DNA of 64,000 nucleotides, from NCBI GenBank assembly GCA_002269645.1, contig NIVC01001967.1, forward strand, positions 124,001-188,000, given 5' to 3'. This stretch comes from Macrostomum lignano (lineage: Eukaryota). Position numbers and translations under genes: made by a program. The notes beneath the pieces were generated by a model, which saw only the letters and a program-made list of their open reading frames with translations, did no database searches and was not told the DNA's origin. Below are positions 303 to 53,094 of this stretch, piece by piece; positions within the stretch are counted from its first letter, which is position 1; each line of letters opens with the position of its first letter.

Positions 303-1625
303 CTACCTAGGATCCAGGGAGAAGACAACCGCAGCATTCTTCAGCTGTTTCAGGGTCCTCACCAGAGCAGTCGTCCAGTAACACTCGTCGTACTCAATCC
401 CGAGTCGAGCGCACACAGCCTTTATGTGTTTGCTCGCTTCCCTGAACCGGTGTCTTGGCATCAGCGGGAACAGGTGGTGCTCGATGTGGAAGTTCAGCCC
501 GCCATGAAACCAGTCCATCCACACGGGGTTCTTTATGTTGATGTTGCACTCAACCTGCATTCGGTACCAGTTGGTCTCCTCGCAGACCTCCTTGCGCTCG
601 TAGAAAGGCTTGCAGTAGTGATTTACCAATAGCTGGACATGGAGAATTCCTTCGAGCATCGACGCCAAAGAGTAAGTTACAAACACTTGAGTCCAAGTTG
701 GAAGTTGGCACAAGAGAACGCTCACCCAGATAATGTGCAAAATCAGAGCCAGCCACACAATAGGTCTTCTTTCACTCACAATTGCTGCTATAACGATGTA
801 TGGTCTTCCCACAATGATGCAGATGGGAAGGAACGTCCAATGCTGAATTGCAATCAGCGCGCGCTGCAGTCTCGTTGTAAAGAATGGGAACAGCTTTTTG
901 TTTTGCGCCCACGATTCCTCTTTCATCTGCGGGTCGAAAAACCCATTCTCATAGTCGACCGTATTGGTGAGTGCGTGGTGGACGTAGTGCTCTTCCTGCC
1001 ACCAGAAGCTGTTGATGCCCACACCGAGCGTTCCACACGCGAGGCCGATCCAGTTGTCAATCTTGCGCTCGTGGAAGCCTTGGCTGTGCATGAAGTCGTG
1101 CATGAAGAATCCGCATTGCTGCCAAAACAGAGCGAGGCTGCAGCTGGCCAGACAGTGCCAGTACCAAGAGCTGCAGCCCACAACCAGAAACAACGTGAGA
1201 GCCAACAAAGAGGCTGCAAACGCCATCTTGCCGGCATACCACACTGCACTGGTTTGAAAGAAGCCCTGCTTGATGAAGAACTGGTGCAGCTCTGCGAACG
1301 CCTCAGCGGCAGGGTCGTCTTCGCTCAGTCTGTAGGTGGCTACAGGCCGCATGTGTTTGAGCACATCCTTGGTATGCAGCCCTTTGAACACGGGAGTAGC
1401 GTCTTTGCCAACAAACTGAGCAATCACAGAGCCGCCTGGGTGGTGCGGGATGAATTTGGAAATGTCGTACCATCCACCGTTGATTCCGATGAGCTTGGCA
1501 GTCGGATGGGAACTCATGTAAGCCTTGTACGCTTCGGTCCTCGTTGGAAGAATAAACTTTTTTGATTTTCGGTCTCTACAGACGCTTTGCGGCTCTGGAT
1601 AACCTCCGGAATCTCCATTGTCCAT
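303..1625 (-). CDS. Cytochrome b5-fused front-end-type fatty acid/sphingolipid desaturase, copy 1 (440 aa, intronless)
   Basis: Cyt b5 motif GINGGWYDISKFIPHHPGG...DATPVFKGLH; His boxes HDFMH, HYVHH and HIEHH (canonical is QxxHH); FWQQCG, LHVQLLVNH and WMDWFHGGLNF...LFPLMPRH segments typical of Delta6/Delta8-sphingolipid desaturases. Confidence 0.93.
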   Translation of the reverse strand: MDNGDSGGYPEPQSVCRDRKSKKFILPTRTEAYKAYMSSHPTAKLIGINGGWYDISKFIPHHPGGSVIAQFVGKDATPVFKGLHTKDVLKHMRPVATYRLSEDDPAAEAFAELHQFFIKQGFFQTSAVWYAGKMAFAASLLALTLFLVVGCSSWYWHCLASCSLALFWQQCGFFMHDFMHSQGFHERKIDNWIGLACGTLGVGINSFWWQEEHYVHHALTNTVDYENGFFDPQMKEESWAQNKKLFPFFTTRLQRALIAIQHWTFLPICIIVGRPYIVIAAIVSERRPIVWLALILHIIWVSVLLCQLPTWTQVFVTYSLASMLEGILHVQLLVNHYCKPFYERKEVCEETNWYRMQVECNINIKNPVWMDWFHGGLNFHIEHHLFPLMPRHRFREASKHIKAVCARLGIEYDECYWTTALVRTLKQLKNAAVVFSLDPR

Positions 1626-1802
1626 TTTGGATCTTGTGTCACTTCTGCCCGTAAGCTATCTGGATATTTCTCAAGCAACGTTCGGTGAGAGTTTAGTGTA
1701 GATGCAGTCTAAAATAATTTTCGCATGAACTAATTTTAGTTCTGGCAAAAAGGAAATAATTTCTTAGCCGTGAATTTATAGAAATAATAGGTGCATATGT
1801 CA

Positions 1803-2056
1803 CGGCCATAGACTTCGTGGGTTTATTAGCTCGACATTTGCGAGTAACCCATGCAAGGACAGCTTAATAAATCAGGACTGAAAAAGAGACAAAAATAAGA
1901 ACTACGCACCATGCGATCATAATATTGCTTTTGTCAAGTTAAGTTAAGTTTGTCAAGCCAAGTTAAGTATTCCCATTTGGTAGCAGTAGATTTGATCTTA
2001 CACGTAAACAGATCCAGACGGAAAAAGGCTAACAATGCGATAATTCGGCCATAGAC
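1803..2056. mobile_element. Short segment bounded by 11-bp direct repeats CGGCCATAGAC; possible non-autonomous Crypton-like insert
   Basis: CGGCCATAGAC at 1803-1813 and 2046-2056; the same CCATAGAC/GTCTATGG word flanks the Crypton-like remnants at 26.8-28.3 kb. Confidence 0.3.
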
Positions 2057-3016
2057 ATCAGCACGAAGAAGGATGTCAGCAGCAACCTCTCATCATCGAC
2101 TCTGTCAATGGTCAAAACTTCTATTTATTTTTTAGCTCATTGGAATCACTTCTTAACACATCGATTTCGATGCAATTAAGATTATAAGCTTGCTTGCTTG
2201 CTAAGACGTTGACTCGTAATCTGGACGTTGCTCCACCTTGAAAACTCGCGTCTCCACCCATTATATCCTGAAGAGGGACCTTCGACCATTGCTCCCCAAT
2301 TTTTTATGAAGGGCCATGACCCCAATTTTACAACGAAAATCCAATTGTTTACTGTTATTACGTATCATAAGCAAACTTCAATATTCGGCTATATTTCTGC
2401 TGGTCCTGTCACTTTTTGAAACGTTCCTAAGCTTATGACTACTCTGGCGACTCACAACACGAGAAGCATTTAATTATTCGTATGTCCTATATTGTTTCAC
2501 ATGAAAACTGTTTAGTATGACTAAAATATTTTATTTTCTTCGTGTTATCTTATGTTTCATTAGGTCCGTCTCGAAGTCGGAGCGGTTTGCAAACTCAAAC
2601 AACACCTACACCTGCGACTGTAGCTTCATTTGCTGTCCTATTCGACATTTTCAAATGCGGTTCTCTTTTTCAAGTCAAAAGTTAGCAAAATTTAGACTGA
2701 GTTGAGACGAGCTCTCGGACTTGTAATGGAGAGAAGCCAACTGGTGGGCATCGGTTGCAGCTACCGTGTTGCAGTGCGGCTCGAGATGCGGAACTCTGCA
2801 TCATCGGACAGGCCATTGCATAGCTGTATTCGAGTCCAAGCGTCTCCAGACATGCACAATGAGTTCCAATGCTGCTGTAATACAAAGGCATTAGAATTTT
2901 AGGAGAGAAAACAGGTGCTGTACCGCGGGGAAAATATTTCATTATGTTTAAGGCGTAGCAAGAGGACAAAGGAGGCTGCGTCTCCGCCTTCAATCGGTTG
3001 GTTGGTAAAAGTATAC

Positions 3017-3328
3017 GGCGCTCCCTTGCAGTAGCCTCAGCGCCCCTTGCAGTAGCCTCAGCGCCCCTTGCAGTAGCCTCAGCGCCCTTGCAGTAGCTTC
3101 AGTTCCCCTTGCAGTATCTTCAGCGCCCCTTGCAGTATCTTCAGCACCCCTTGCAGTATCTTCAGCGCCCCTTGCAGTATCTTCAGCGCCCCTTGCAGTA
3201 TCTTCAGCACCCCTTGCAGTATCTTCAGCACCCCTTGCAGTATCTTCAGCACCCCTTGCAGTATCTTCAGCGCCTCTTGCAGTATCTTCAGCGCCTCTTG
3301 CAGTATCTTCAGCGCCTCTTGCAGTATC
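3017..3328. repeat. 21-bp minisatellite (CAGCGCCCCTTGCAGTATCTT)n, ~15 copies
   Basis: Direct reading; explains spurious ORF 3109-3336 (LQYLQRP repeats). Confidence 0.95.
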
Positions 3329-4314
3329 TATCTTAGAGCTCCTGATGACGCCTTTTACCCTGACAACCTGGCTCTGGTATCACTCAACCATTCAAACTTG
3401 GCACTCCTTAAATAAAATGTCGCCCATGGCGCTACGAGCGTAAATTCAAAACGGCTCCATCAAACTAAACAAATCCACTTTCAATTAATTACGAGAAATA
3501 AAAAACTTTTATTAATGGATTAAGAGATTGTTTTTTTCAGCTCTATTTGCAGGGTCCATGGACTGTAAAGACCAACTACAGTCCTTATTACAAAATACTT
3601 TAAATTAAATGTAGATAAAAAGCTGCATAAAATTGTACTTCCAGCTAAGCAAAGTAGGCGAGTCCAGTCCTTATCTTAAAAAACTGAGTTCGCAAGCTGA
3701 AAAAGTATTTGAAAACGGTTCGCGCAGGCACTATATAAGAATACACTGGTATTCTTTGGTCTCCAAGGAAAACTCGACCCCTGCACCCCCAGAAGATATG
3801 ATCTTACGACCCTGCACCCAGACATGACCCAGATGATCGAGTGGCTCAGCTAGCTTTTGAGCGCGTCATTGCGCTAACATGCTTTGAGAAAAAACTTGTG
3901 TGTAAAGTTGTCCAAGACTAACCTTCCAGCCCATTCACCTATATTTTAACTAGACTGTACACTGCTAGACAGAAATACAGTGTGCACGAAAATTTAAAGT
4001 TTATTCTTCTGCAGCGCAGCAGTTCGAAAATTTGAGATCACAATTTTTAATAACTTTGCATTGCTTAGACCAGAGCATTTAGGCATGTTATCCATGTATT
4101 AAAGTATTTCTGCTTTCTGTAGGAAGAAATTGCTCCTAAGCTGCCATCAAAATTTCAAATTTCAAACTACATGTACTTCTGTTCCGCTCATCACGTTTAT
4201 GATGAGCTGGGTTGATCAATAAATCTTGGAAGAGCGCTAGAAACATTGTTACACTAGATTAAATAGCAGGTAAGGTGTGGCTGAGTTCCAAAAGTTAGCG
4301 AAACTCTATCAGAC

Positions 4315-4409
4315 CAGTGCGTAGCGATGCTCCATCAGGGATCAGTGGGTAGCGATGCTCCACCAGGGATCAGTGGGTAGCGATGCTCCACCAGGAATCA
4401 GTGGGTAGC
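4315..4409. repeat. 28-bp minisatellite (ATCAGTGGGTAGCGATGCTCCACCAGGG), ~3.5 copies
   Basis: Direct reading. Confidence 0.9.
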
Positions 4410-5424
4410 ACAAACCTGTTCTATTAGATATTTAGACTCTTAAATAAGGCATTTCCTCTAGAGTACAGTACTCAGTACTCATGCGGATACAGAAATGATC
4501 CTTCCGGTTATCGGCAAATTATATTTTGAATCACGAAAGAGGCATCGCGAACAGGATTCGTGAAAATCAAAGACTAAGCCTATCTCATTAAAAAAGCATA
4601 AATATTCAGTCCTCAATAAGATATTTTTAGATAAAAGAGCGAAACAAATGCTCGATTTTACTAAAAAATTATGGTTAAAAGTTTAAATAAATATTTATAA
4701 ATAACAATTGATTACAAAATGAATAGCTAAGAAAGAGAGAACTGACGCAATTGAATTTTTTAAGCTTGCTGATAATTTGTTGCACCATAGCATTTAAATT
4801 TCCTTTGTTTTTTTTCAAATCAGTCATTTTCTTTGTGCACCCAGAAAATTGCGAGTAAAAAGCGTATTTTGCTAGAATTGAATATATACGAGCGTACTTA
4901 AAATGTATATAGGAGTACTTTGAGGTGAACTCAACTGGAGATTACCAAATTTACATATCAACGGTTAGTCATGAATGAATAGTCGTCAATATGGGGGTAA
5001 AATAGCCACTAAAAAGAAAATTCACTTTGCTACTCATAGCTATTGGATTTATTGGGGCAGAGAAGCACAATGGCAACTTGTTGCAAATTGCTAGCGTGAA
5101 GTCTATCAGAAATCAAGCTGTCGCTTTTGTACCTCAGCTGCCTATCAAGTGTTACCTAGCTCTGATTGGTAGAGGTAGAAGAGCCAAGAGTTTGATTTTG
5201 AAACATTCATGGATAATGCCATTAAAACTACTGCTGTCATGCTGTTGGACTGTTAGTTTATGTAAACCTCAAGCTAAAAGCAGCCACTTACCCACAGTTA
5301 AAAAATAAAAAAATACCCTTGCACGCGGTAGATACCCTTACATTTGCAGCAGTATTTGAATGATAAAATGGGAGGTTAATATTTTAGGAAATTCTTAAGT
5401 ATACAATCACTCATGCCTTCGTTC

Positions 5425-6866
5425 TCATCTCGGATCCAGGGAGAAGACAACCGCAGCATTCTTCAGCTGTTGCAGGGTCCTCACCAGAGCAGTCGTCCAG
5501 TAACACTCGTCGTACTCAATCCCGAGTCGAGCGCACACAGCCTTTATGTGTTTGCTCGCTTCCCTGAACCGGTGTCTTGGCATCAGCGGGAACAGGTGGT
5601 GCTCGATGTGGAAGTTCAGCCCGCCATGAAACCAGTCCATCCACACGGGGTTCTTTATGTTGATGTTGCATCAACCTGCATTCGGTACCAGTTGGTCTCC
5701 TCGCAGACCTCCTTACGCTCGTAGAAAGGCTTGCAGTAGTGATTTACCAATAGCTGGACATGGAGAATTCCTTCGAGCATCGACGCCAAAGAGTAAGTTA
5801 CAAACACTTGAGTCCAAGTTGGAAGTTGGCACAAGAGAACGCTCACCCAGATAATGTGCAAAATCAGAGCCAGCCACACAATAGGTCTTCTTTCACTCAC
5901 AATTGCTGCTATAACGATGTATGGTCTTCCCACAATGATGCAGATGGGAAGGAACGTCCAATGCTGAATTGCAATCAGCGCGCGCTGCAGTCTCGTTGTA
6001 AAGAATGGGAACAGCTTTTTGTTTTGCGCCCACGATTCCTCTTTCATCTGCGGGTCGAAAAACCCATTCTCATAGTCGACCGTATTGGTGAGTGCGTGGT
6101 GGACGTAGTGCTCTTCCTGCCACCAGAAGCTGTTGATGCCCACACCGAGCGTTCCACACGCGAGGCCGATCCAGTTGTCAATCTTGCGCTCGTGGAAGCC
6201 TTGGCTGTGCATGAAGTCGTGCATGAAGAATCCGCATTGCTGCCAAAACAGAGCGAGGCTGCAGCTGGCCAGACAGTGCCAGTACCAAGAGCTGCAGCCC
6301 ACAACCAGAAACAACGTGAGAGCCAACAAAGAGGCTGCAAACGCCATCTTGCCGGCATACCACACTGCACTGGTTTGAAAGAAGCCCTGCTTGATGAAGA
6401 ACTGGTGCAGCTCTGCGAACGCCTCAGCGGCAGGGTCGTCTTCGCTCAGTCTGTAGGTGGCTACAGGCCGCATGTGTTTGAGCACATCCTTGGTATGCAG
6501 CCCTTTGAACACGGGAGTAGCGTCTTTGCCAACAAACTGAGCAATCACAGAGCCGCCTGGGTGGTGCGGGATGAATTTGGAAATGTCGTACCATCCACCG
6601 TTGATTCCGATGAGCTTGGCAGTCGGATGGGAACTCATGTAAGCCTTGTACGCTTCGGTCCTCGTTAGTGCATCTGCTGGGATCTTCAGTGCAGGGTTGC
6701 TTCGACGAATGCAGCTGAACCCATTTCGCGAGGAGTTTTCTTCCGCTTCCGAATCTTGTGCTGAAAGTTCATACTTATTGGTTTCACGGATTTTAAAAGT
6801 AGCGGCATTCGCTGAAATGCTAGTGTTGCATTCTGATTGATGCTTTCCTAGGCGATGACTCACCAT
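5425..6866 (-). pseudogene. Desaturase copy 2 with 1-bp deletion frameshift (pseudogene or assembly error)
   Basis: Near-identical to copy 1 over 5432-6666. It reads gttgca-tcaacc at 5670/5671 versus gttgcactcaacc in copies 1 and 3, splitting the ORF into 5655-6866 and 5425-5646 before the third His box. Confidence 0.88.
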
Positions 6867-7352
6867 GCTTGTTTGATAGATAGGGTGTTTTAATTTGTCT
6901 TGTTAACTTCATGCAAGTGGTAAGCTCGTCATGTATTTTTTCTTTAACAGTTCAAATTCGAAAGTAAAGTCAGAGTTAAGGAATATATAGAGGTTTTAGA
7001 AAACGTACATGAGTGGTCTAGATACGGAACGGTCAGATTGAACACCCCATAATATGAACCTTCGTACTTGCACACTTGTACGTAGCATGTTGCACGTACG
7101 CTTCATATTTGCTCGGACCATACAGCAATGGTCTGATGGCCTGTTCTAAAAATAGATTTACCAGACAGCCCAACCAAAATCTACTTGGAGGGTTTAGGAT
7201 TCCACTAGGGCATTAGTCATGCTGCGAGCGCGTGGAGAAAAGCGGGCGAACGTACCCCACTTTGCCTTGTACGCACTCTGAAATATGGGCACAGAAATTT
7301 TCCGTTGAAGGAACTGGCTCCAAAGAGAGCCCAGACTTCTAATCTATACATA

Positions 7353-8340
7353 CGAGGGGTATTCATACGAGGAGTTTTCCGGATGTGAAAGACTGAAATA
7401 AGTTAGAGAGCAACTGACAGTCAAATTTTTTCAAGGTACTCTCCAGAAGAATCTATGCACGGTTGCATCCCTTCAAACCACCCATTGAAGCAGCTGGACC
7501 ACTACGAACTTGGCACCCCCTTGACATGCTTGATGAAGGCCTCGACTGCAGCTTCCGGCGATGAATAGCGATTGCCACACATCTTTTGCTTGAATTGCGA
7601 AAACACGAAGAAGTCGAACGGGGCCAGATCTGGGCTGTAGGGTGGATGGCCGAGCTCTTGAATGCGTTTTCCGGTCAGGAACTCGACCACTTGCCTGGAC
7701 TTGTGGGCGGGGGCGTTGTCGTGATGAAGAAGCACACCCGAGCTACGAGTAAGTCCTTGGGCGGCAGCTGGAGAGAGCACTCAGCACTTCTGGCAAGCAG
7801 TAGTTGGTATAACGGTCGCCAGTGGCTGTGCGCTGCTGCACAAGTGGCACTATCGCTAGATGACCAGCTTTCATCACAAAAATGGCCAGCATCTGCTTTG
7901 CCACGCTGCGCTCTCGCTGCAGCTTCAATGATGGGGCTTCCAGCTGGTGTCCACCGGGCCGACTGTTGCTTGGACTCTGGTCAAAACTACAGATCCAGGA
8001 TTACGTCACCACTGACGAGTTCCCAGACCGAGTCTGAGCGGCCATCATCGAATCTGTCGAGCATGGCATCGCACGAAGCCACCCCGAGCCTTCTTTGTTT
8101 CTCCATCAGGGTGATGAGGCACCCAGCGTGCAGAAATCTTGCTCAGGTTGAGCTCTGAGTGCAGGAATCGTGCGGATGGGTCCCGATGAGATGCATACTT
8201 ATGCCGAATCTATCTGAGACACAGTTACCCTGGCATCATCCTCAATCATGGCCGGAATGGCAGCAAAATTCTCATCGCTTGCTTGCTAGGGAGACGGCCG
8301 CTGCACTCGTCATCATCCAGACTCCGTAGGCCATGTCGAA
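7353..8340 (-). mobile_element. Degenerate mariner (DD34D) transposon, one end truncated
   Basis: Minus-strand fragments with WVPHH, LHHDNAPAH and GHPPYSPDLAPFDFF motifs plus a degenerate first catalytic-Asp region; terminal TA+CGAGGGGTATTCA at 7351 resembles the TIR of the 29-kb mariner; no matching second TIR seen. Confidence 0.9.
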
Positions 8341-9399
8341 ATTCGACAAACCACTCAAAAACTGTAGTGCTGGAGGGTGATTCACTTCAAAAAGCCACTT
8401 AGCCACAAGTTAATATATTTAACTAGACGAGCGATACGGTGTAGAATGTAGGTTCTACATTCACACTAGAACCTAAGGCCGGTGCGCATGAATAAAGCAT
8501 TTTATATTTAGATATTTAGATGGATTGGGCTAGAGCTCTCATTGATCCTGCAGTTAAACCAAAACAACTGATACAAAATGCAGTACACAACATCACCCTC
8601 CGAAAGATTTCTGTTTGAAACGATCTAAACGAAGGAACATTGGTTACGAACTTGCATCCCTAGTGAAGGAATGATAATTCAATGTTTTGAACGAAAGAAA
8701 AGAAAAGAAAAGAACAAAGGAACAAAATCATATTTGGTATCAGAATATCTGATACCTAGAATACTACTGAAAGTCCTACAATCTGAGCTATTAGATAACC
8801 ACAGAATGATCTCATATACAATACGCATAGTATACTAGTGTGTAGCTGAGTAAGCTGAGTATTTGGATGCTTAAAATACGAGTAGTAGTTTAAGTGACAT
8901 AAAATTAAATAAAGTGACAGTCAATGGCAAATCGGTGTACTTAGGGTTAGGCCGCCTCCTGATAGTACTCAGGAGTCTTGACAAGCTCGGCCACGATACG
9001 GCCTAGGCCCCATCTCGCTGCCCCAAGGCCGGCTCAAGGACGACTAAAGTAACGTATATATAGGACGCAAGACTCAACTTTCGTGGAAAATTCGTTGGAG
9101 GCCGATTTTCGTAATGGTTTGCATAGTTTGCAGTTTCGTCTCTTTTAACGTTTTTCTTGTTTGTTTTGACACAATAAAATCAGCAATTTTAGATGAATTT
9201 TTTTTTTGATAGGACTATACCGTTGACGAGTATTTTGAGCTGTTAAAGATCGACTTATTCAACTTATTGATGTCTTAACTGAAAGAGCATGTTACTGCCT
9301 ATTCTGCGACAAAATAAGCATCTTACAATCAATAGCGTGCACAGGAGATACATTGAAAAATCGGCCTCCAATGAAATTTTCACCAATTCTGAGTCTTGC

Positions 9400-10920
9400 G
9401 TCCTTCTACTTAAGTAGTCCTTGGGCCGGCTTCACAGAAGCCGCGGCTGCACGGAGGCCGACCGATAAACTCCCTCCTCCTCCTCTTCGCTGCTTTGTTG
9501 GAATCCACCGACTGTCACACCAATCTTTCGAGACCTGATGAAGCGGTGGCTCCGTCTGAGTAACTGTCAAGTCTCTATTTGAACCCAGTACGACCCTGAA
9601 GAGTTCTCACACTCGCTATCAATCTCAGCTACCACCCATTCGCGACGACCGCGTTGTAACCACACCAGATCACCAGCTGCTAGTTTTTGCAAGGGTTGGA
9701 GCTCCACAATTGTATAGCTGCGGTTATCTGTTTTACAAAAGCCTCTATGCTGGTGTGAAGACGAGTTTCCATTGTTTACAGGTCCTTGAAATTCGCTGGC
9801 AGGTCACAACGAAGCTTACGGCCGAAAGCCATCTCCGCCGGGCTTGGAAAGCCGCTGCCAACCGGAGTGTTGCAGTAGTGAAGCAGTGCCAACTATAAAC
9901 TTTGGCCTATCTTGGGACATTTTTTCAGCATGTTTTTGACTGTCTATGCGTAGCGCTTGGCTCTACCGTTCGACTGCGGGTACGTGCGTTCCACCTTCAA
10001 CTGAGACATTGTTTGTCGAAACTCGAGAGCAGAAAACTATTTGACCTCCATCACTGACTAGCTTCTCTGGCACTCCAATTTTTTAAAATGATCCCGTATC
10101 ACATGCGCCACAGCCAAGCTAGGGCTGGTCTCATCCGCGTGACACTCATCCAGCGACTGTAGGAGTCAACGTACACAAAGTAGGATCCACCAGGGAGCTC
10201 AAATGGGTCCGTTGAAAAATTTGGCATCAACGTTACTTTTGACTGAGTCATCATATCCTGCTGGCATGAATTCGCATTCACTAACCACCTGCTTCACGCT
10301 GTTCCACATTCCTGGCCAGTAGAAAATAGTTCTTGGCCTTGAGGTCCATTTTCAAAATGCTAGGGTGCCTCAAACGAAGGATTTTAATTGCTCCGACTTT
10401 CGAGCCGACATACCATAGATACGGTCCTAAATACCGCATCGAAGACCAGAGGCAAACATCAGGTTATTTCGGATATCCCAAAGAAGGCTTCAACTTCGTC
10501 GTCTGCCAACTTCGACCGATGCTCTGGCCAAGCCTCCATGATTACAGTTTGCAACCTCTCGCTAAGTTGCATTTTCTGTCGCAGCCTTTATAACCTGCAA
10601 GATTTCTCGATCACCACTAAAGCAGCATTCCACTGAAAAATCTTGGCCGTGAAGCGCAGCCTCAAGCTGAATAGTGAGAAGATCAGCTGCACCGTGAGCT
10701 CGACTTAAAGTGTCGGCTACGTAAAGGTCTTAGTCGGGCGTGTACTTCACGTGGATGTCATACGAGCGTAAGGTTGCAACTGGAAGCAAGGAGTCGCTGA
10801 ATTCGAGGAGTAGTGTCACGCAAAGCCTTCTTACAGATCGATTCGTGGCTTGTGGTCGCTTTGCACTTGCGCCGTACGACCCCAGATATAACGATGGAGC
10901 CTTTTGGCAATCATTGGCCA
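9400..10920 (-). mobile_element. Degenerate Ty3/Gypsy LTR-retrotransposon pol fragment (RNase H end and integrase)
   Basis: Minus-strand frameshifted peptides: YDIHVKYTP..LYVADTLSRAH, FWDIRNNL, FYWPGMWNSVKQVVSEC, YVDSYSRW, LALLHYCNTPVGSGFPSPAEMAFGRKLR, SYWVQ..LLRRSHRF. No LTR pair identified. Confidence 0.85.
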
Positions 10921-12679
10921 AAGGAGCTCAACTTTAGGAATCTAATTTAAGAGTCAACTTCAAAAAGATACTTAACGCAGCTTCTTTTTGAATTTGACAA
11001 TAGAAACGTGATAGAATTAGCAATGTCTCCATTCGTTCAGATTTAAAACAATAATACTTTACTGTGTGACGATATGATAAATTGTTACTATCCCGAAGAA
11101 TATCTGATTCTTCCATCATTCGTCCTATATCGTTTCAAGTTCCAAAAAGTGGTCGTATATTTTAGGTAGCTAATTACGAATTATTTATTAGCTCAACAAC
11201 TAGAGCATGAAAATAGAGCTCTATAGATTCTATACGAATCAGATATACTGCAGTGATATGTTATTATTGAACACCTTTCCGATGCTCTGTTTATTGGTAT
11301 ACATATAGCCAGGGCTGTGTGTCTGCGGGCCCCCTCTGTAATCACCTGGGGTGGAGCGTGGGCCTTGGCAGCAAAAACTATAGGATATGGCAAAGTTGTA
11401 GCCATACGGCAAAGAGAATATTTTAGATCTAACTAAATAGCGTACTCCTACATTTCAACACCGCATTTCGATAACGCGAGCCCGCCATTTACGATAGGTT
11501 TGGCGATGAACGACGAACTGCATGCAGCTTGGTTTATTTTACCTCACGTGCGGACATGTAATTTGTTTGTTGGTACATATTTACAATAAACTCATTATGT
11601 TTTATCTGGAGCTATATCTGGTAACTTGTTTCTATGAATAAAATCAATGCCAGAGTGAATTCAACTCGAATACAGAGCGGACAATGTTATTTACCAAATA
11701 GAGATTGGCGGCTGAAAAAATTCAAGAAGTCAAATAAAATTTTAAGTCGGCATAAAGTACTAGATCAGAAATGACAGTATAAAAATTAAAAAAAGACAAA
11801 AAAGCATGATACATGTAGATCAGTCTAAAAGGTTTAAATAGAGTCCGAGCACAGGCAGAATGAAGCATTTAACAAGATTTCTAAATCTAGTTTTCTGAAA
11901 GATATTTTCGTCAAATTTTATAGATCAAATCAAAAGACAGCAACGTCAAAGCAGTACAAAGCAATATTCGTCCGCTCACAATGGAAAGTATGTCATACGC
12001 TCGTAGATAGCAGCTCAATTAATTACAGAAAAAGCTAAGGAAAAAGTAAGCAGTTAAGCAGTTAAAATGGAGCAATAAAAATCATCCTTTGATCACTTGT
12101 TTCCACGTTTCAGTTAAAAAAGGTTGAGGTAACCTACAAATCGTATATCACTTGAAAAGGCACAGGACTTGGCCAAGGCCCCTACTGGACAACAATGGAA
12201 TGCTTAGTTAAACCAGATAATTGTCAGTTTGAGTAAAATTTCGGTGAAACTTGATTCAGCACAATAAAAGCAGTAGAATTTGCATCTTCCCTATCAACGC
12301 ACGCTAGAAACTGTACGTCAGAATTAGATCCTTGGCCGCTGCATTTCAAATAGTCTAAACTAAGACCTAGAGTCGAAAGCTGAAAAGTAACGCTATCGTT
12401 ACAATAGTCTGTACATTATATGCCGTTTCTCGCATGCTCCAGAGGCAGAGAAGCACATTCGACAAAACTCTAAGCTTCTGGCTACACCTGATTTATTAAG
12501 AATGAGTCCCAAATCCATAAAACTCCCCCATAAAATTTCTACAACCAATCCTGATTGGTACGTAACATCGGCTACTTTTCAGCAGTACAAAAAAACAAAA
12601 TTATTCGAAGCGATTCTACGCTCGTACACTACGAAAACTACGCCAGTTGGTCCGTACGCGATAAGAACTCGTTTCGTTC

Positions 12680-14110
12680 TCATCTCGGATCCAGGGAGAA
12701 GACAACCGCAGCATTCTTCAGCTGTTGCAGGGTCCTCACCAGAGCAGTCGTCCAGTAACACTCGTCGTACTCAATCCCGAGTCGAGCGCACACAGCCTTC
12801 ACGTGTTTGCTCGCTTCCCTGAACCGATGTCTTGGCATCAGCGGAAACAGGTGGTGCTCAATGTGAAAATTCAGCCCGCCATGAAACCAGTCCATCCACA
12901 CGGGGTTCTTTATGTTGATGTTGCACTCAACCTGCATTCGGTACCAGTTGGTCTCCTCGCAGACTTCTTTGCGCTCGTAGAAAGGCTTACAGTAGTGACT
13001 CACTAATAGCTGGACATGAAGAATTCCTTCTAGCATTGACGCCAAAGAGTAAGTTACAAAAACTTGAGTCCATGTTGGAAGTTGGCACAAGAGAACGCTC
13101 ACCCAGATAATGTGCAAAATCAAAGCCAGCCATATAATGAGCCGCTTTTCACTCTTGAATGCAGTGATGATTATAGCAGTTCGACCAAGTATTATGCAGG
13201 CAGGAAGGAACGTCCAATGCTGGATTTTTATCAGCTTATGCTGCAGTTTCATTGTGAAGAATGGGAACAACTTTTTGTTTTGCGCCCACGATTCCTCTTT
13301 CATCTGAGGGTCGAAAAACCCATTCTCATAGTCGACCGTATTGGTGAGTGCGTGGTGGACGTAGTGCTCTTCCTGCCACCAGAAGCTGTTGACGCCCACA
13401 CCGAGCGTTCCACACGCGAGGCCGATCCAGTTGTCAATCTTGCGCTCGTGGAAGCCTTGGCTGTGCATGAAGTCGTGCATGAAGAATCCGCATTGCTGCC
13501 AAAACAGAGCGAGGCTGCAGCTGGCCAGACAGTGCCAGTACCAAGAGCTGCAGCCCACAACCAGAAACAACGTGAGAGCCAACAAAGAGGCTGCAAACGC
13601 CATCTTGCCGGCATACCACACTGCACTGGTTTGAAAGAAGCCCTGCTTGATGAAGAACTGGTGCAGCTCTGCGAACGCCTCAGCGGCAGGGTCGTCTTCG
13701 CTCAGTCTGTAGGTGGCTACAGGCCGCATGTGTTTGAGCACATCCTTGGTATGCAGCCCTTTGAACACGGGAGTAGCGTCTTTGCCAACAAACTGAGCAA
13801 TCACAGAGCCGCCTGGGTGGTGCGGGATGAATTTGGAAATGTCGTACCATCCACCGTTGATTCCGATGAGCTTGGCAGTCGGATGGGAACTCATGTAAGC
13901 CTTGTACGCTTCGGTCCTCGTTAGTGCATCTGCTGGGATCTTCAGTGCAGGGTTGCTTCGACGAATGCAGCTGAACCCATTTCGCGAGGAGTCTTCTTCC
14001 GTTTCTGCATCTTGTACAGCCTCTCGAAGCTCAATAGTAGTGGTTGAGTTGGTCGCAACGCGGGTGCTGCATTCTGAAGATTGATGCTTACCTAGGCGAT
14101 GACTTACCAT
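12680..14110 (-). CDS. Cytochrome b5-fused desaturase, copy 3 (476 aa, intronless)
   Basis: Intact ORF with HPGG, HDFMH, HYVHH and HIEHH; differs from copy 1 mainly in the N-terminus and one ~40-aa block. Confidence 0.93.
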   Translation of the reverse strand: MVSHRLGKHQSSECSTRVATNSTTTIELREAVQDAETEEDSSRNGFSCIRRSNPALKIPADALTRTEAYKAYMSSHPTAKLIGINGGWYDISKFIPHHPGGSVIAQFVGKDATPVFKGLHTKDVLKHMRPVATYRLSEDDPAAEAFAELHQFFIKQGFFQTSAVWYAGKMAFAASLLALTLFLVVGCSSWYWHCLASCSLALFWQQCGFFMHDFMHSQGFHERKIDNWIGLACGTLGVGVNSFWWQEEHYVHHALTNTVDYENGFFDPQMKEESWAQNKKLFPFFTMKLQHKLIKIQHWTFLPACIILGRTAIIITAFKSEKRLIIWLALILHIIWVSVLLCQLPTWTQVFVTYSLASMLEGILHVQLLVSHYCKPFYERKEVCEETNWYRMQVECNINIKNPVWMDWFHGGLNFHIEHHLFPLMPRHRFREASKHVKAVCARLGIEYDECYWTTALVRTLQQLKNAAVVFSLDPR

Positions 14111-17227: not shown

Positions 17228-17697
17228 TAGAGGGCAGGCATAATCTAGCTCAGCCAATGAGAGAGCAGTAAAGAGATGAAGTCAAACCGTCAAAGCCAGA
17301 CGGACGAAGCCGTCTAGGGCAAGCCCAATCTAGCTCAGCCAATGAGAGAGCAGTAAGGAGAAGAGGTCAAACCGTCAAATCCAGAAGGACGAAGCAGTCT
17401 AGGGCAGGCCCAATCTAGCTCAGCTAATGAGAGAGCAGTAAGGAGAAGAGGTCAAACCGGCAAAGCCAGACGGACGAAGCAGTCTAGGGCAAGCCCAATC
17501 TAGCTCAGCTAATGAGAGAGCAGTAAGGAGAAGAGGTCAAACCGGCAAAGCCAGAAGGAAGAAGCAGTCTAGGGCAGGCCCAATCTAGCTCAGCCAATGA
17601 GAGAGCAGTAAGGAGAAGAGGTCAAACCGTCAAAGCCAGACGGACGAAGCAGTCTAGGGCAGGCCCAATCTAGCTCAGCCAATGAGAGAGCAGTAAG
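17228..17697. repeat. 85-bp tandem repeat, ~5.5 copies
   Basis: AATCTAGCTCAG recurs at 17242, 17327, 17412, 17497, 17582 and 17667. Confidence 0.95.
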
Positions 17698-19773: not shown

Positions 19774-22700
19774 CTAGTCGCAAGGTTTGTACATGACAGT
19801 AGTAACGAACTTCTTCCTATAGCGGTGTATTGTGGACAGCACAATAACGCCGTCCTTTATGCTCAAAGCGTAAAGGTGGTTGAGCATCACGTGATCTGGC
19901 TCGGGCAGAAGGTTCGGATCGTACTTGGCGTCAGTTGGCTTGTTCAATATTACCTGGAGCAGTTGCTGGGGCAGAGCGGGAGGGTTCCTGCCGGGCCCCG
20001 AGGCTCTTGGCTGCGGCACTGTGTTGGTGTAGCGGCCTGTCAGTGGAATTATTAAATGGCAAGCATTGAGCTAAGGTAAAGCTGGGCACCACTCAGCCGG
20101 ATAAACATTGACAGGCTTGCAGAGGCAGGGTTTTAAATCACAAAAAGAGGGAAATAAGTCACAGAGGGAGACGTAAGTCACAGAGGGAGACGTAAGTCAC
20201 AGATGGAGATGTAAGTCGCAGATGGAGATGCAATTCGCAGAGGGAGATGCGATTCGCAGATGGAGATGCGATTCGCAGATGGAGATGCAATTCGCAGAGG
20301 GAGATGCAATTCGCAGATGGAGATGCAATTCGCAGATGGAGATGCGATTCGCAGATGGAGATGCAATTCGCAGATGGAGATGCAATTCGCAGAGGGAGAT
20401 GCAAGTTGCAGAGGGAGATGCAATTCGCAGATGGAGATGCAATTCGCAGATGGAGATGCAATTCGCAGATGGAGATGTAATTCGCAGATGGAGATGCAAT
20501 TCGCAGATGGAGATGCAATTCGCAGAGGGAGATGCAATTCGCAGATGGAGATGCAATTGGCAGATGGAGATGCAAGTCGCAGATGGAGATGCAATTCGCA
20601 GAGGGAGATGCAAGTTGCAGAGGGAGATGTAAGTCGCAGAGGGAGATGTAAGTTGCAGAGGGAGATGTAAGTTGCAGAGGGAGATGTAAGTTGCAGAGGG
20701 AGATGTAAGTCGCAGATGGAGATGTAAGTCGCAGATGGAGATGTAAGTCGCAGAGGGAGATGTAAGTCGCAGATGGAGATGTAAGTCGTAGAGGGAGATG
20801 TAAGTCGCAGAGGGAGATGTAAGTCGCAGAGGGAGATGTAAGTCGCAGATGGAGATGTAAGTCGTAGAGGGAGATGTAAGTCGCAGAGGGAGATGTAAGT
20901 CGCAGAGGGAGATGTAAGTCGCACACGGAAATACATCACAATACCCCAAGCGAAAAGTTTTGAATTTCAAGGTGCATCTCAATAGACACTGATTATGTGA
21001 AACGCGCCAGCCACCAACCTGTAGAAGCAGCCGTTCATAGCAATCGGGAACTATGACTAGAAAATAATATTTATGACTATGATCAAACACTAATAAATTG
21101 GCCATAACTTTGCACGCTTGTACTTTAATTAAAAACGAGAAGTTTTAAATTTTTCACAGTGAGCTATTCTACATCGATTGACAATTAGTAAGCAGCATTA
21201 ATTACCAGGTGGACTGCCGGAACGGTGGCGGGTGCGCTCGGAGACCTCCGATTGAGTTGTAGTGTCCTTTGGCTGATTGGACTCTGCAATGTCCATGGCC
21301 AAGGCTTCAAACACTTCAAAGTCGGACGCCTTGACTTCGATCCGGTTGTTCACCGAGCCCATGTTGTTGGGCACAGTAGGCTAAAATTGAAAGTGAGTTT
21401 TTCTGTTTGAGTATTTAGCTGTATTTAGCTCCATGTAAGCTCGTAAGCACGAAAATTAAATAGATTCTTTGGTTTAGAATAGCTCATGCTAAATCTTAAA
21501 GAAATTGGATGCCAAAGCTCGTTTAGATCGCCATCAAAGGAGGTACTTTTTGCTTGTACCCGAGGTGCTGGTGCTGCCAAAAGTGTCCAGACTAATGCTC
21601 ACTACATGGTCAATCCACATCAAATTTGATGAAATTTGATATCGAATTAGTCTGAATTTTACGGGTCCATGAGAATTATCCGCAGACGAATTGCCTGCCG
21701 AAATTTTCTCGCAATTACGATGTGAAATGCAATGTGAAATTTCGGGTCTATGAGAATTTCCCGCAGGGTTCCAGTCGGAATTTCAAGTCAAATCCAGTCT
21801 ATAGATAATGCTGGACTGGACTAAATTAGAACTAGCCTACACTACACTAGATTTCAAATCCGATTGAATTCGACTTGAAATCCCGATTGGAAAAACCCTG
21901 CGTTAAAAACTCGCTGCGCGAAAAGTTCGTGCGGGCACACCTCGCTGCGGGAAAACTTCCTACGAGAAATTCTCATAGACCCGAAATTTTGAGCTCCCGA
22001 AAGTGACAGAACTTTTCGATCGCGTGAAGGTGACCAGCAGGAATTTTCAACGATATGAAACTTTGCGCTTAAGAAATTTTGGGTTTGTGAAAGATTTTCT
22101 TTCGACGATGTGCAATTTTGAGCACATTTTAAGCTCCAGTCGAATGCTATCAAAATGCATCTCAATAGACACTATGTCAAACGCGCCAGCAACCAACCGG
22201 TAGACACAGCCGGCCATAGCGATCGGGAGCTGTGACTAGAAAATCAAATTTGTGAATTCGATCAATGATGACTAAATTGGTCATCAATTTTCACACTTGA
22301 TGCTTTGAGTAAATACAATTTACATGATCTCTGAATTACGTTTCAGTCAAATTCTGACTTGAACTGCCTATGTACTGAGAATTAGTCCGGGAACTTCTGC
22401 AGCACCCTTCATACATGAGTTTTGATCTCTTTAAACATTAAGACAATGTGAACGAGCTTTCCTTTTTTTCTTTGCTGCCGTGTTATCGGTGTTCAGTTCA
22501 GCACAAGGACTGAGGGTCGCAACGCACCCTCAATTACCCCAGCTAATGCTGGCTCCAATTTTACAGCTGAGTGAACTGAAGCAATTCAGATTTAAGTGTC
22601 TTGCTTATGCACAGAACAGACAAAGTTTTTACACAATCCACAGCAGCACCAACCTGCTTCCCATCGTGCTTCCAAGCATCGTCTACAATGAACTTGTATT

Positions 22701-29010: not shown

Positions 29011-30356
29011 CGAGGTGTATTCAAAAAGTTCTTTTCGGTCCTTTGGCATTTATTTTTAAAAAGCCTTGTAAACAGAATTTTAGCGATTTCACCAAGTTAT
29101 GTCTATGGCCTAAACGTTCCTAGGGTTTTAAGTCTCAGTTTGCAACTATGTTAGAGCAGCGAACATTTCTATCAGCTACCACTCAATTTCTTGGCCATGG
29201 CTGAATCATTTTCAAAGCAAGACGTTCGAAGCTTGATGAAGTTTCAGTTTCTGCAAGGAAAAAAGCCACTGGATATGTTTAGGGAGCTTCAGCAAGTGCT
29301 TGGCAAATGTGCACCAACTGAGCAGACAGTTCGAAAATGGTACCGGCTGTTCGCTGAGGGAAGAGAGAGCGTTGAGGACAATGATCGCTCTGGAAGGCCG
29401 ATGACTGCAACCAACGAGACTGTTGTGAAGAAAGTGCAAGAGCTCCTGGATGATGATCGGTGACGGACTTGCGAAGAGTTGGCAGAAGACGTTGGTGTGT
29501 CAGTAGGAAGCGTCCACACCATTCTGACGGAGCGTCTTCACCTGCAGAAAAAGTTTTGCAAGTGGGTGCCACACCTGCTGACAGGTGAGCAAAAGATGCA
29601 GCGAACTGTGGCTTCAAGCAGCCACCTGCGTCGGTTCCATCGAGAAGGGGAGGATTTTCTATCAAGAATTGTAGCTGGAGACGAGACGTGGGTTTACAGC
29701 TGGGATCCTGAGACAAAGGCCCAGTCTGCCGAATGGCTTCCAGCACATTCTCCAAGACCTCAGAAGGCCATCAGGAAGCAGGGCGCGATGAAGATCATGC
29801 ACGTCATGTTTTTTGATTCCCAAGGAATCCTGCTGAACTGGGCAGTCCCACAAGGAACCACCGTCAATGGGGACTACTACAAGTGGATTCTGCAGGAGAA
29901 GCTGCGCCCAGCAATACGAAAGAAGCGCCCTGATCTGCTGGAATCTGGCATGATCCTGCTGCACGACAATGCGCCAGCACATCGCAAGCACAACGTCGTG
30001 GAACTCCTGAGCAAATGGGGATGGGAAGTGCTCCAACATCCAGCCTATTCGCCTGATTTGTCGCCGTGCGACTTCTTCTTATTTCCATCTGTGAAGAAGC
30101 ACCTTCGGGGCATTCGATTCGACAGCGTCGAGCACATCGAGGCTGCATGCAATCAAGCTGTTCGCCAAACGGACGCGAGTGGTGTGAGTTCCGGAATCAG
30201 AGGCCTGGTAAATCACTAATAGAAGTGCAAAGACATTGGCCGTGAATATGTTGAGTGACCGAATCATGTTAAGCAATCTAACAGTGTTTTCATAGTTCCA
30301 GTTGTTTTGTGTTCAGTTTTGTAGGGCACCGAAAAGAACTTTTTGAATACACCTCG
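29011..30356 (+). mobile_element. Full-length mariner transposon (1346 bp), 29-bp perfect TIRs, TA target duplication
   Basis: TA|CGAGGTGTATTCAAAAAGTTCTTTTCGGT ... ACCGAAAAGAACTTTTTGAATACACCTCG|TA. Confidence 0.97.
29197..30258 (+). pseudogene. Mariner DD34D transposase, single frame interrupted by nonsense codons
   Basis: HTH N-terminus, WVPHLL, AGDETWVY, LHDNAPAH, YSPDLSPCDF; in-frame TGA at 29461 and TAA-TAG at 30217-30222; terminal EYVE-stop. Confidence 0.93.
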
Positions 30357-37229: not shown

Positions 37230-38512
37230 ATGCCGCGACCTTTACGTGGTCAGGACAACGGTGAGCCGCACTTAACTGCTGCGGCGGCCAGAAGCGGCAG
37301 GACCAAGCGAGGGCAACAAAGCGAGGGCAGCAAAGCGAGCGTCGGCGTGTTGGGCGTCGGCTGCTACTGCGCTGGCCTATACGGATCTTCTGGGTGGCGC
37401 TATAAGGGCCAAGAGGCATATCGATCCCCAGCCTACCACAGGGCATGCTTTGGGTCGGGACGCGAGGACGTTGAACTGCCGCACGCTCAAGGGTGCCTGG
37501 CGAAGCAAAGCTGGCCAGAGCCCGACCTAAGCTGTGATGTCATCGCACTGCAGGAGGTGTCTAAGGCTGATCCGGGGCTATCGCGGTTGCAGCCGTGCTG
37601 GATCCGTACCTGCGTCCTGAGCAGAATGGCTTTCGGCCTCGTCGCGGCATACTGGCGCAGATCCTAGCTCTTCACCGAGTCATCGAAGAGGCGCGGACAC
37701 GCCAATTGATCCTAATTGTTATCGTAATTGATTTCAAGAAGGCATTCGACTCTGTCGTCAGGTCTGTGCTTCCAAAGGTGCTCCGTGCGTACAACGTGCC
37801 AGAGCAGCTGATTTCCGCCATCATGTCGATGTACCGTGATGCGAAAGCTGCTGTTTCAAAATCGGACGGCCTATCGGACTTCTTTGAGATATACTCTGGG
37901 GTGCTTCAGGGAGATACACAGCTTGCGCCGTTCCCGTTCGTTATGGTGCTTGACTGGGTGCTGCGGACCGCTCTTCCTACCAACGACGACGCCTTTCTGT
38001 TGCGGCGACGCGTGGGTCGACGCCAACCGGAGAGGCGGCTCAGCGTTCTTGGCTACGCCGACGATCTCGCCTCGCTGTCCTCAACTGTCGAAGGAGCACA
38101 GCGACAACACGACCGCAACATGATTGCGGCGAGTGCCGGCCTGGTGGTCAACACGCGAAGACCGTCGGGCTCTGCGTGTCGGACGACATCAAGGCTGTAA
38201 TTTTCTGCCGAGGCGCTGACGGGCAGGTGACTAGACTTCCGAGTCTGTCTAAACAACCTGTTGCGTCGTCGGTGACTCCAGCTGGCAGGCCACATCATCC
38301 GCACCGAGACGTACTGCCCATGAGGTGCTGCTGCCAACGCTGCAGGCACCCCACCGGCGGGGGCAGGCGCGCACTCGACGTTTCGTCGACTGACTGCCAG
38401 CAGACGCCGACGCCCGTGGATTCGGCCGGCGGCGTTGCGTTCGTTCTCGACCTTGCTCTGAAGCTCGCCCTGTGACGCTGACCGCGTATTTTGTTGTTGT
38501 TGCTGTTGCATT
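37230..38512 (+). mobile_element. RTE-clade non-LTR retrotransposon, internally deleted and degenerate
   Basis: Endonuclease start TLNCRTL..DVIALQEV joined to RT PYLRPEQNGFR, IDFKKAFDSV, GVLQGD, LGYADDL; C-terminal LQLAGHIIR; (TTG)n tail at 38490-38512. Confidence 0.88.
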
Positions 38513-49077: not shown

Positions 49078-49209
49078 TTTAAATTGTAGAAGTTTTTTAT
49101 TAAAAAAATTAATTTTAAACTTTTTAGCTAAAGAAAACTAAAAAACGTCAGGTAAATCAGGTAGAAGAGAAGCTACGAGTATTCATGTAGTATATTCAAA
49201 TTTTTTTAT

Positions 49210-53015: not shown

Positions 53016-53094
53016 TAGTAGTGTATGAAAAAAAGTAGCATAATTTTTTTCATTGAAAGCTTTTATTAAAGGACTAATTAAAAAGACCTGGATT

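What the first reader, a model, noticed from the sequence alone, without database searches (positions are those of the whole stretch)
303..14110. Triplicated b5-fused desaturase of Delta8-sphingolipid/Delta6 type with a non-canonical HIEHH third His box
Seen: all three copies read WMDWFHGGLNFHIEHHLFP, together with HPGG, HDFMH and WWQEEHYVHH. Established: cytochrome-b5-fused front-end and Delta8-sphingolipid desaturases almost invariably have Q at the first position of box 3 (QxxHH), and a Q-to-H substitution in a plant Delta6 enzyme was reported to abolish activity. The LHVQLLV(N/S)H, FWQQCG and DP..E.WA.N.KLF segments look more like fungal/plant SLD and Mortierella-type Delta6 proteins than vertebrate FADS1/2. 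Inference: a natural HxxHH variant kept and amplified in an animal may have altered chemistry (different regiochemistry, sphingoid-base desaturation, or hydroxylase/conjugase-like activity). It may also have been acquired horizontally.
Basis: partly seen in the sequence, partly recalled or inferred. Interest (0 to 1): 0.72.

Follow-up and report, generated by a model that had tools for sequence, protein, structure and literature searches.

The report
Flatworm tandem sphingolipid-type desaturase genes
Three tandem, intronless cytochrome-b5-fused desaturase genes of the flatworm Macrostomum lignano belong to a widespread animal and protist family in which the "odd" HxxHH third histidine box is the normal state, so the motif is ordinary for the family, although no animal member has been tested biochemically.

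Summary
Three minus-strand, intronless copies (303-1625, 5425-6866, 12680-14110) encode Cyt-b5 + FA_desaturase proteins with HPGG, HDFMH, WWQEEHYVHH and HIEHH. The window is Macrostomum lignano contig NIVC01001967.1.

The interpretation mostly fails. HxxHH is not a private variant:
- All 96 homologs at least 40% identical to copy 3 with a readable box 3 have H.
- Q takes over only below about 35% identity, where the plant, fungal and chytrid Delta8-sphingolipid desaturases begin.
- The H-type clade separates from the Q-type with 96.5% NJ bootstrap.
- It includes brachiopod, annelid, priapulid, bryozoan, tunicate, amphioxus and acoel proteins, plus diatoms and diplonemids.
- RefSeq names several members "sphingolipid 10-desaturase".

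Recent horizontal transfer is not supported. The nearest relatives are animal, the flanks carry animal genes, and the three-copy layout recurs at two other loci in the same assembly.

Copy 2 has a 1-nt deletion, which GenBank's model hides by splicing copy 2 to copy 1. The copies show gene conversion plus one diverged 40-codon patch.

The most likely function is sphingoid long-chain-base desaturation. This is inferred, not shown. It is a new member of a known kind, of modest interest.

The parts
303..1625 (-). Copy 1. Intact intronless CDS of 440 aa (Cyt-b5 + FA_desaturase). Its first 27 residues (MDNGDSGG...) are unique to this copy. GenBank does not annotate it as a separate gene.
   Evidence: ORF list; Pfam; alignment to P0001
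5425..6866 (-). Copy 2. The CDS is 99.7% identical to copy 1 over the shared core but carries a 1-nt deletion. The ORF 5655-6866 gives 403 aa without box 3. Box 3 and the C-terminus continue in another frame to the stop at 5425-5427.
5670..5671 (-). Site of the missing base in copy 2 (GTTGA-TGCAAC, against GTTGAGTGCAAC in copies 1 and 3).
   Evidence: the middle copy is intact in locus L002 and frameshifted at a different column in L003
12680..14110 (-). Copy 3. Intact intronless CDS of 476 aa, identical to a GenBank M. lignano protein (P0188).
474..488 (-). His box 3 (HIEHH) of copy 1. The same box lies at 5596-5610 in copy 2 and 12851-12865 in copy 3.
975..1004 (-). His box 2 region (WWQEEHYVHH) of copy 1. 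Also at 6096-6125 and 13352-13381.
1086..1100 (-). His box 1 (HDFMH) of copy 1. Also at 6207-6221 and 13463-13477.
1431..1442 (-). Heme-binding HPGG of the b5 domain of copy 1. Also at 6552-6563 and 13808-13819.
1017..1545 (-). Tract of about 528 nt that is 100% identical in all three copies (also 6138-6666 and 13394-13922), covering the b5 domain through box 1. Interpreted as a gene-conversion tract.
13133..13252 (-). Diverged 40-codon patch (core codons 224-263; copy 1 equivalent 756-875), lying between box 2 and the following helices. It has 16 amino-acid differences between copy 3 and copies 1/2, with nucleotide identity of 64-86% in the 90-nt windows covering it.
   Evidence: helices 288-341 in the AF2 model

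Best explanation
This is a tandem array of three intronless genes in the nuclear genome of the flatworm Macrostomum lignano. Two are intact and the middle one is frameshifted in this assembly. They encode ER-type membrane desaturases with an N-terminal cytochrome-b5 electron-donor domain.

They belong to a distinct clade that lies next to the classical Q-type Delta8-sphingolipid desaturases. In this clade box 1 is HD-x-M-H, box 2 is WW(R/Q)(D/E)EHxxHH, and box 3 is HxxHH in every close member. The box-3 histidine is therefore the ancestral, selected state. By inference, it is a direct di-iron ligand, as in the many membrane desaturases that have HxxHH.

The most likely substrate is the sphingoid long-chain base of ceramide or glucosylceramide, with a double bond introduced distal to C4 (Delta10-type or Delta8-type). 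The reasons are that the nearest named relatives are annotated as sphingolipid 10-desaturase and the next-nearest family is the Delta8-SLDs.

The array is old. It predates the divergence of the three copies of the locus in this assembly. It evolves by gene conversion, apart from one patch where copy 3 and copies 1/2 have diverged.

Shown: family membership, clade-wide H, gene structure, and the duplication and conversion pattern. Inferred: substrate class, regiochemistry, and metal ligation by the box-3 histidine.
For: - Pfam Cyt-b5 + FA_desaturase.
- Window = GCA_002269645.1 NIVC01001967.1 at 100% identity.
- The best hits are animal proteins at 42-58% identity: Lingula, Owenia, Priapulus, Styela, Watersipora, Dimorphilus, Ciona, Branchiostoma, Convolutriloba. 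Several are named sphingolipid 10-desaturase(-like) by RefSeq, as are two Diplonema proteins.
- Box 3 is H in 96/96 homologs at >=40% identity and 54/55 at 35-40%. Q dominates below 30% (94 against 5).
- An exhaustive HMMER search gives H at ranks 1-38, with Q starting at rank 39.
- The H/Q split has 96.5% support in an NJ bootstrap tree of 145 sequences.
- Twelve columns distinguish the H-type from the Q-type group, including DPQ against DPD and H333 against F.
- The AF2 model is confident: pLDDT 89.1, pTM 0.86.
- Outside the patch, differences between copy 3 and copy 1 are almost all synonymous (3 amino-acid changes in core codons 264-413), which indicates purifying selection.
- The same three-copy layout followed by an SH2 tyrosine-kinase gene occurs at two further loci.
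- Within one locus copies 1 and 2 differ at 9 sites, while copy 2 differs at 21 sites between loci, which indicates concerted evolution.
- Marine invertebrates, including ascidians, are reported to contain 4,8,10-triene sphingoid bases (introduction of PMC4440215).
Against: - I could not obtain the sequence of the one characterised enzyme, the Thalassiosira pseudonana sphingolipid Delta10-desaturase (Michaelson et al. 2013; paper not held). It was not identifiable among the hits. The functional anchor therefore rests on names given by annotation pipelines.
- No animal member has been characterised. PMC6010785 states that b5-fused sphingolipid desaturases had not been identified in Metazoa.
- No named mollusc, echinoderm or cnidarian protein appears among the hits, although those groups are known for triene bases. 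The taxonomic fit to that chemistry is therefore imperfect.
- M. lignano sphingolipids are, as far as I could find, undescribed.
- b5-fusion desaturases are known to change substrate and regiochemistry between close relatives (discussion in PMC4440215).
Confidence: 0.6

Rival explanations
1. The proteins are fatty-acyl desaturases, not sphingoid-base desaturases. They would act on acyl-CoA or glycerolipid-bound chains, for example a first or mid-chain desaturation such as Delta11 on 16:0, or synthesis of non-methylene-interrupted fatty acids.
For: The b5-fusion superfamily mixes acyl and sphingolipid specificities in closely related branches (PMC5037126; discussion in PMC4440215). JGI labels on homologs vary: 'fatty acid desaturase', 'delta8-fatty-acid desaturase', 'acyl-lipid Delta6-acetylenase'. 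The named animal hits do not match the taxa best known for triene bases. From my own memory, unverified: T. pseudonana also has a b5-fused Delta11 palmitate desaturase, which may be a relative.
Against: The closest named relatives and the next-nearest family are both sphingolipid desaturases. No characterised acyl desaturase appeared among the named hits above the Q-type SLDs.
Confidence: 0.25
2. One reading: a private Q-to-H variant in an animal has produced novel chemistry (hydroxylase, conjugase or altered regiochemistry) and was then amplified, possibly after horizontal acquisition.
For: Box 3 does differ from the QxxHH of classical front-end desaturases (PMC3877899). There are three copies here and nine across the assembly. 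The genes are intronless. The rooted NJ tree does not cleanly separate animal from protist sequences.
Against: H is universal in well over 100 homologs from many phyla, so there was no Q-to-H event in this lineage. The nearest relatives are animal, and Mlig + P0002 has 100% bootstrap support. The flanks carry animal-type genes: SH2 tyrosine kinase, rhodopsin-type GPCR, ACAD. CDS GC content (0.51) resembles that of the neighbouring ACAD gene (0.55). Single-exon structure is shared with Priapulus, Owenia and another eukaryotic contig. The array predates the split between the three loci.
Confidence: 0.04
3. The array is decaying: the copies are pseudogenes, or on the way to becoming pseudogenes, with no current enzymatic role.
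For: The middle copy carries a 1-nt deletion here and a different one in locus L003. No expression data could be examined.
Against: Copies 1 and 3 are full-length ORFs with every catalytic motif. Outside one patch their differences are overwhelmingly synonymous. Copy 3 is identical between L001 and L003, and the middle copy is intact in L002. Single-base indels are also a common error in long-read assemblies of near-identical repeats.
Confidence: 0.05

Closest known systems
Sphingolipid Delta10-desaturase of the diatom Thalassiosira pseudonana (cytochrome-b5 fusion; Michaelson et al. 2013, Phytochemistry 90:50; cited in PMC4440215)
   Same: N-terminal b5 fusion and membrane desaturase domain. 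RefSeq and the Diplonema genome annotation give this enzyme's name to proteins 42-57% identical to the window's proteins. Diatom homologs with H-type box 3 (HSVHH or HSPHH) fall in the same clade.
   Different: I could not compare the sequences directly. Diatom members of the clade are only about 31-38% identical to copy 3 and form a separate subclade. The substrate and position of desaturation in animals are untested.
Plant, fungal and chytrid Delta8-sphingolipid desaturases (SLD; Q-type)
   Same: Same architecture (HPGG b5 domain plus three His boxes). They share WxDWFHGGL just before box 3. They are the next-nearest family at 23-32% identity.
   Different: Box 3 is QxxHH, box 1 is HD(S/A)GH, box 2 is WWKxxHNxHH, and DPD replaces DPQ after box 2. 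The two groups separate with 96.5% NJ bootstrap.
Classical front-end fatty-acyl desaturases (vertebrate FADS1/2/3, Mortierella and borage Delta6, Delta5, Delta4)
   Same: b5 fusion and three His boxes.
   Different: QxxHH is treated as diagnostic of these enzymes (PMC3877899, PMC12405942, PMC3423564), and surveys of animal Fads require it (PMC6010785). No vertebrate FADS appeared among the named hits. Q-type representatives start only at rank 39, about 31-38% identity.
Fusarium graminearum Delta10(E)-sphingolipid desaturase (PMC4440215)
   Same: b5-fusion enzyme that makes a 10,11 double bond in a sphingoid base.
   Different: It is 55.7% identical to the fungal Delta8 SLD and shares under 20% similarity with the diatom Delta10 enzyme. 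It requires a C9-methyl substrate (PMC4440215). It is an independent origin of Delta10 activity within the fungal SLD lineage, not this clade.

Membership tests
Cytochrome-b5-fusion membrane desaturases (superfamily) | N-terminal cytochrome-b5 domain with the HPGG heme motif | tested here: met
   Pfam PF00173, E about 1e-10, in copies 1 and 3. HPGG is present in all three copies. The profile matches solved b5 structures at E down to 2e-15.
Cytochrome-b5-fusion membrane desaturases (superfamily) | FA_desaturase domain with three histidine boxes: HxxxH, HxxHH and (H/Q)xxHH | tested here: met
   PF00487, E 1.6e-31 and 4.8e-31. HDFMH, HYVHH and HIEHH are present. All box histidines are invariant across 79 aligned homologs.
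Classical front-end desaturases and Q-type Delta8-SLDs | Glutamine at the first position of box 3 (QxxHH) | tested here: not met
   H in all three copies and in every homolog at >=40% identity.
Classical front-end desaturases and Q-type Delta8-SLDs | Groups with characterised Q-type members in a phylogeny | tested here: not met
   The NJ tree separates the H-type from the Q-type group with 96.5% bootstrap. Identity to named plant and fungal SLDs is 23-29%.
H-type 'sphingolipid 10-desaturase-like' clade | Box 3 HxxHH, box 1 HD-x-M-H, box 2 WW(R/Q/K)(D/E)EHxxHH and DPQ after box 2 | tested here: met
   HDFMH, WWQEEHYVHH, DPQMKEE and HIEHH. Clade-diagnostic columns. Q at the third residue of the WW-x-x-E motif in box 2 (as in WWQDE) occurs in 13 other H-type members; the commonest form, RDE, occurs in 119.
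H-type 'sphingolipid 10-desaturase-like' clade | Closest relatives are members of the clade, including proteins that carry the name | tested here: met
   Lingula 'sphingolipid 10-desaturase isoform X2' at 57% identity; Priapulus and Branchiostoma '-like' at 43-50%; Diplonema at 42%.
H-type 'sphingolipid 10-desaturase-like' clade | Direct sequence relationship to the characterised T. pseudonana Delta10 enzyme | tested here: inconclusive
   The reference sequence could not be retrieved or recognised among the hits. The link is inferred from pipeline names only.
H-type 'sphingolipid 10-desaturase-like' clade | Delta10 desaturation of sphingoid long-chain bases | not testable with these tools
   Needs expression and LC-MS of long-chain bases.

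The most novel reading that the evidence does not exclude
The metazoan H-type clade may contain the still unidentified animal enzymes that make the Delta8 and/or Delta10 double bonds of the 4,8,10-triene sphingoid bases of marine invertebrates. Surveys of animal desaturases would have missed it because they filter for QxxHH. In M. lignano, the two conserved paralog types (copy 3 against copies 1/2) differ mainly in a 40-residue patch after box 2. They could have split the two sequential desaturations, or two substrates, between them.
Probability: 0.2. Interest if true: 0.55.

Novelty: new member of a known kind. Interest (0 to 1): 0.3.

Why it matters
If the family assignment is right, the motif that looked exceptional is simply the signature of a neglected desaturase family. 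The claim of a natural Q-to-H "experiment" then disappears.

What remains useful is modest:
- Animals in several phyla carry b5-fused, sphingolipid-type desaturases.
- Published surveys that require QxxHH exclude these proteins.
- No animal member has been characterised.
- M. lignano is a genetically tractable flatworm with two conserved paralog types, so it would be a convenient system for finding out what these enzymes make.

The work also flags a chimeric GenBank gene model (PAA62162.1).

Tried and rejected
1. Retrieving the T. pseudonana Delta10 enzyme. The paper is not held. Two further homolog searches, from a protist hit and from a 28-sequence profile, plus a cluster look-up of 10 diatom-like hits, returned no protein labelled Thalassiosira. 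The functional anchor stays indirect.

2. Literature on animal members. Searches for 'sphingolipid 10-desaturase', 'TpdesN' and 'Macrostomum + desaturase' gave nothing relevant.

3. Structural anchoring. The AF2 model is confident. Foldseek against the PDB gave only weak matches to subunits of the Chlamydomonas Ycf2/Orf2971-FtsHi complex (TM 0.47-0.59, 13% identity) and to isolated b5 domains. A sequence search of the PDB matched only b5 domains. No solved homolog tells us about box-3 ligation.

4. Conservation of the paralog types. HMM scoring of copy 1 against copy 3 with the family profile showed no difference (609.5 against 608.9 bits; 21 against 21 matches to the consensus in the patch). 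Neither type looks degenerate.

5. Intron comparison in Lingula and B. floridae. It failed because those exact isoforms are not on record. Owenia and Priapulus were used instead.

6. Contamination or recent HGT. Rejected on the flanking genes, GC content and nearest relatives.

7. The NJ tree does not resolve the deeper order of the animal and protist subclades (bootstraps of 25-35%). I draw no conclusion on ancient transfers.


Full report
**What is there**

A six-frame scan finds the reported motifs three times on the minus strand.
- Copy 1 (303-1625, 440 aa) and copy 3 (12680-14110, 476 aa) are uninterrupted ORFs.
- Both match Pfam FA_desaturase (E 1.6e-31 and 4.8e-31) and Cyt-b5 (E about 1e-10).
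- Copy 2 (5425-6866) lacks one base between window 5670 and 5671 relative to the other two. Its ORF therefore stops after 403 aa, and the HIEHH box sits in another frame.
- All three genes are intronless.

**Where it comes from**

The window is identical to the reverse complement of Macrostomum lignano contig NIVC01001967.1, assembly GCA_002269645.1.
- GenBank annotates only two genes here. One equals copy 3.
- The other (PAA62162.1, 480 aa, spanning 6564 nt) joins the 5' part of copy 2 to the 3' part of copy 1 across a false 'intron'. That model hides the frameshift and drops copy 1's own start.
- Beyond the window start lies an SH2 tyrosine-kinase gene.
- Inside the window are an acyl-CoA dehydrogenase gene, a two-exon rhodopsin-type GPCR, a reverse-transcriptase fragment and a mariner-like transposase.

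This is ordinary animal nuclear DNA.

**Structure of the array**

Similarity between the copies is confined to the coding sequence. The intergenic DNA does not align.
- The first 528 nt of the shared core are identical in all three copies.
- Core codons 224-263 then differ sharply between copy 3 and copies 1/2: 16 amino-acid changes, and 64-86% nucleotide identity in the 90-nt windows covering the patch.
- The 3' third differs by about 5%, almost all synonymous.
- Two more loci in the same assembly carry the same three-copy layout followed by the kinase gene. One is 98-99% identical to this locus (haplotype-like), the other 94-97% (homeolog-like).
- Copies 1 and 2 within this locus differ at 9 sites, while copy 2 differs at 21 sites between loci.

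The array therefore predates the split between the loci, and its members are being homogenised by gene conversion. Both paralog types are retained.

The middle copy is intact in one of the other loci and frameshifted at a different column in the other. This fits either assembly error or recent decay. I cannot tell which.

**The box-3 question**

- Every hit to copy 3 with E <= 1.5e-45 and a readable box 3 has H at the first position, apart from one 30%-identical Q-type protein (P0091).
- Pooling all 374 proteins fetched and binning by identity to copy 3 gives the following:

| Identity to copy 3 | H | Q |
|---|---|---|
| >=40% | 96 | 0 |
| 35-40% | 54 | 1 |
| 30-35% | 46 | 24 |
| <30% | 5 | 94 |

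- An exhaustive HMMER search of 1.84 billion representatives found 248 proteins at E <= 1e-30. Ranks 1-38 are all H where the box is readable, and Q begins at rank 39.
- The H-type proteins also share HD-x-M-H, WW(R/Q/K)(D/E)EHxxHH, DPQ and other diagnostic columns, against HD(S/A)GH, WWKxxHNxHH and DPD in the Q-type.
- In an NJ tree (145 sequences, 402 columns, 200 bootstraps) the H/Q split has 96.5% support.

So HxxHH is the family norm. The Q-to-H loss of activity reported for a plant Delta6 enzyme (Sayanova and colleagues; from my own memory, not checked here) concerns a different active-site background.

**Who else has it**

Named members come from:
- Animals: Lingula, Owenia, Dimorphilus, Watersipora, Priapulus, Styela, Ciona, Clavelina, two Branchiostoma species and Convolutriloba.
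- Protists: Diplonema and several diatoms.

The flatworm proteins pair with an unnamed 69-70% identical transcript (100% bootstrap). They sit among spiralian sequences with weak support.

Priapulus and an unnamed 486-kb eukaryotic contig have intronless genes. Owenia has one large coding exon plus a short 5' exon, and a tandem neighbour of the same family. Intronlessness is therefore a family trait and not a sign of recent transfer. Coding GC content (0.51) is close to that of the neighbouring ACAD gene (0.55).

**Function**

RefSeq calls the Lingula, Priapulus and Branchiostoma proteins sphingolipid 10-desaturase(-like), and the Diplonema annotation does the same. The name traces to the b5-fusion enzyme of Thalassiosira pseudonana that makes d18:3(4,8,10) bases (Michaelson 2013, cited in PMC4440215).

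I could not obtain that sequence, so this link is indirect.

The next-nearest family is the Delta8-sphingolipid desaturases. Triene sphingoid bases are reported from ascidians, starfish, a sea anemone, a sponge and scallops (PMC4440215, PMC11765627).

A 2018 survey states that b5-fused sphingolipid desaturases had not been identified in Metazoa, and it required QxxHH for inclusion (PMC6010785). That filter would exclude this clade.

Against a simple match: no named mollusc, echinoderm or cnidarian protein appeared among the hits.

I therefore rate 'sphingoid-base desaturase, Delta10- or Delta8-type' as the best explanation at about 0.6. An acyl-chain desaturase is the main rival.

**Structure**

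AlphaFold2 with a 79-sequence alignment gives a confident model (pLDDT 89.1, pTM 0.86) with a disordered N-terminus of about 54 residues. The PDB holds no close homolog of the desaturase domain, by sequence or by fold. Ligation of iron by the box-3 histidine is an inference from other HxxHH membrane desaturases.

**Verdict**

This is a new member of a known, little-studied family. The locus itself is ordinary. The family's role in animals is an open but modest question.

Noticed in passing
window 303-6866 (GenBank PAA62162.1 = P0001): The deposited gene model is a chimera. It splices the 5' part of copy 2 to the 3' part of copy 1 across about 5.1 kb. This hides copy 2's 1-nt deletion and leaves copy 1 unannotated as a separate gene.
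   Followed up: yes
L002 (NIVC01000385.1) and L003 (NIVC01000691.1): Two more loci in the same assembly carry the same three-copy array plus a downstream SH2 tyrosine-kinase gene. L003 is 98-99% identical to this locus and L002 is 94-97% identical. The middle copy is intact in L002 and frameshifted at a different site in L003.
   Followed up: yes
window 13133-13252 (copy 3) and 756-875 (copy 1): A 40-codon patch after His box 2 carries 16 amino-acid differences between the paralog types, while flanking sequence is identical or differs only synonymously. This may be a specificity-determining region. Neither version is closer to the family consensus.
   Followed up: partly
window 49200-62100: A large block of satellites is arranged as an inverted pair. 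A 24-mer (GGATTATTGCACTTGATAAGCCAA) lies at 53090-54045 and its reverse complement at 54666-55888. A 29/30-mer (GGGAATTGCTGAGATGTCAAGGCTTAAGA) lies at 49214-51507 and its reverse complement at 57114-57428 and 61238-62039. GC skew changes sign near 54 kb.
   Followed up: no
window 3018-3329; 17231-17697; 20155-20923: Minisatellites: 21 bp x 15 between copies 1 and 2, 85 bp x 5.5, and 19 bp x 40. The last generates long spurious ORFs on the minus strand.
   Followed up: no
window 33979-35226 (+): An intronless 415-aa ORF with all three acyl-CoA dehydrogenase domains (Pfam E down to 2e-48).
   Followed up: no
window 41165-41776 and 42987-44135 (+): Two ORFs that together cover a rhodopsin-family 7TM receptor (7tm_1 profile positions 1-85 and 97-229). 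Probably one gene with an intron of about 1.2 kb.
   Followed up: no
window 29479-30219 (+); 37595-38200 (+): Fragments of a mariner/DDE transposase and of a reverse transcriptase.
   Followed up: no
P0239 (Trichoplax sp. H2, 472 aa): A placozoan protein named Delta(8)-fatty-acid desaturase has the classical Q-type signature (HDTGH, WWKRTHNVHH, QVEHH). At least one early-branching animal therefore carries the Q-type SLD-like form.
   Followed up: no
L004 (Owenia fusiformis), L005 (Priapulus caudatus), L006 (unnamed ENA contig): Family members in other animals are also encoded by a single large exon. Owenia has a second family member immediately upstream, so it too has a tandem duplication.
   Followed up: partly
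hit list: No named mollusc, echinoderm or cnidarian homolog appears, although those groups are the classic sources of 4,8,10-triene sphingoid bases. A fly entry (Condylostylus, 318 aa, patchy match) looks like a fragment or a contaminant.
   Followed up: no
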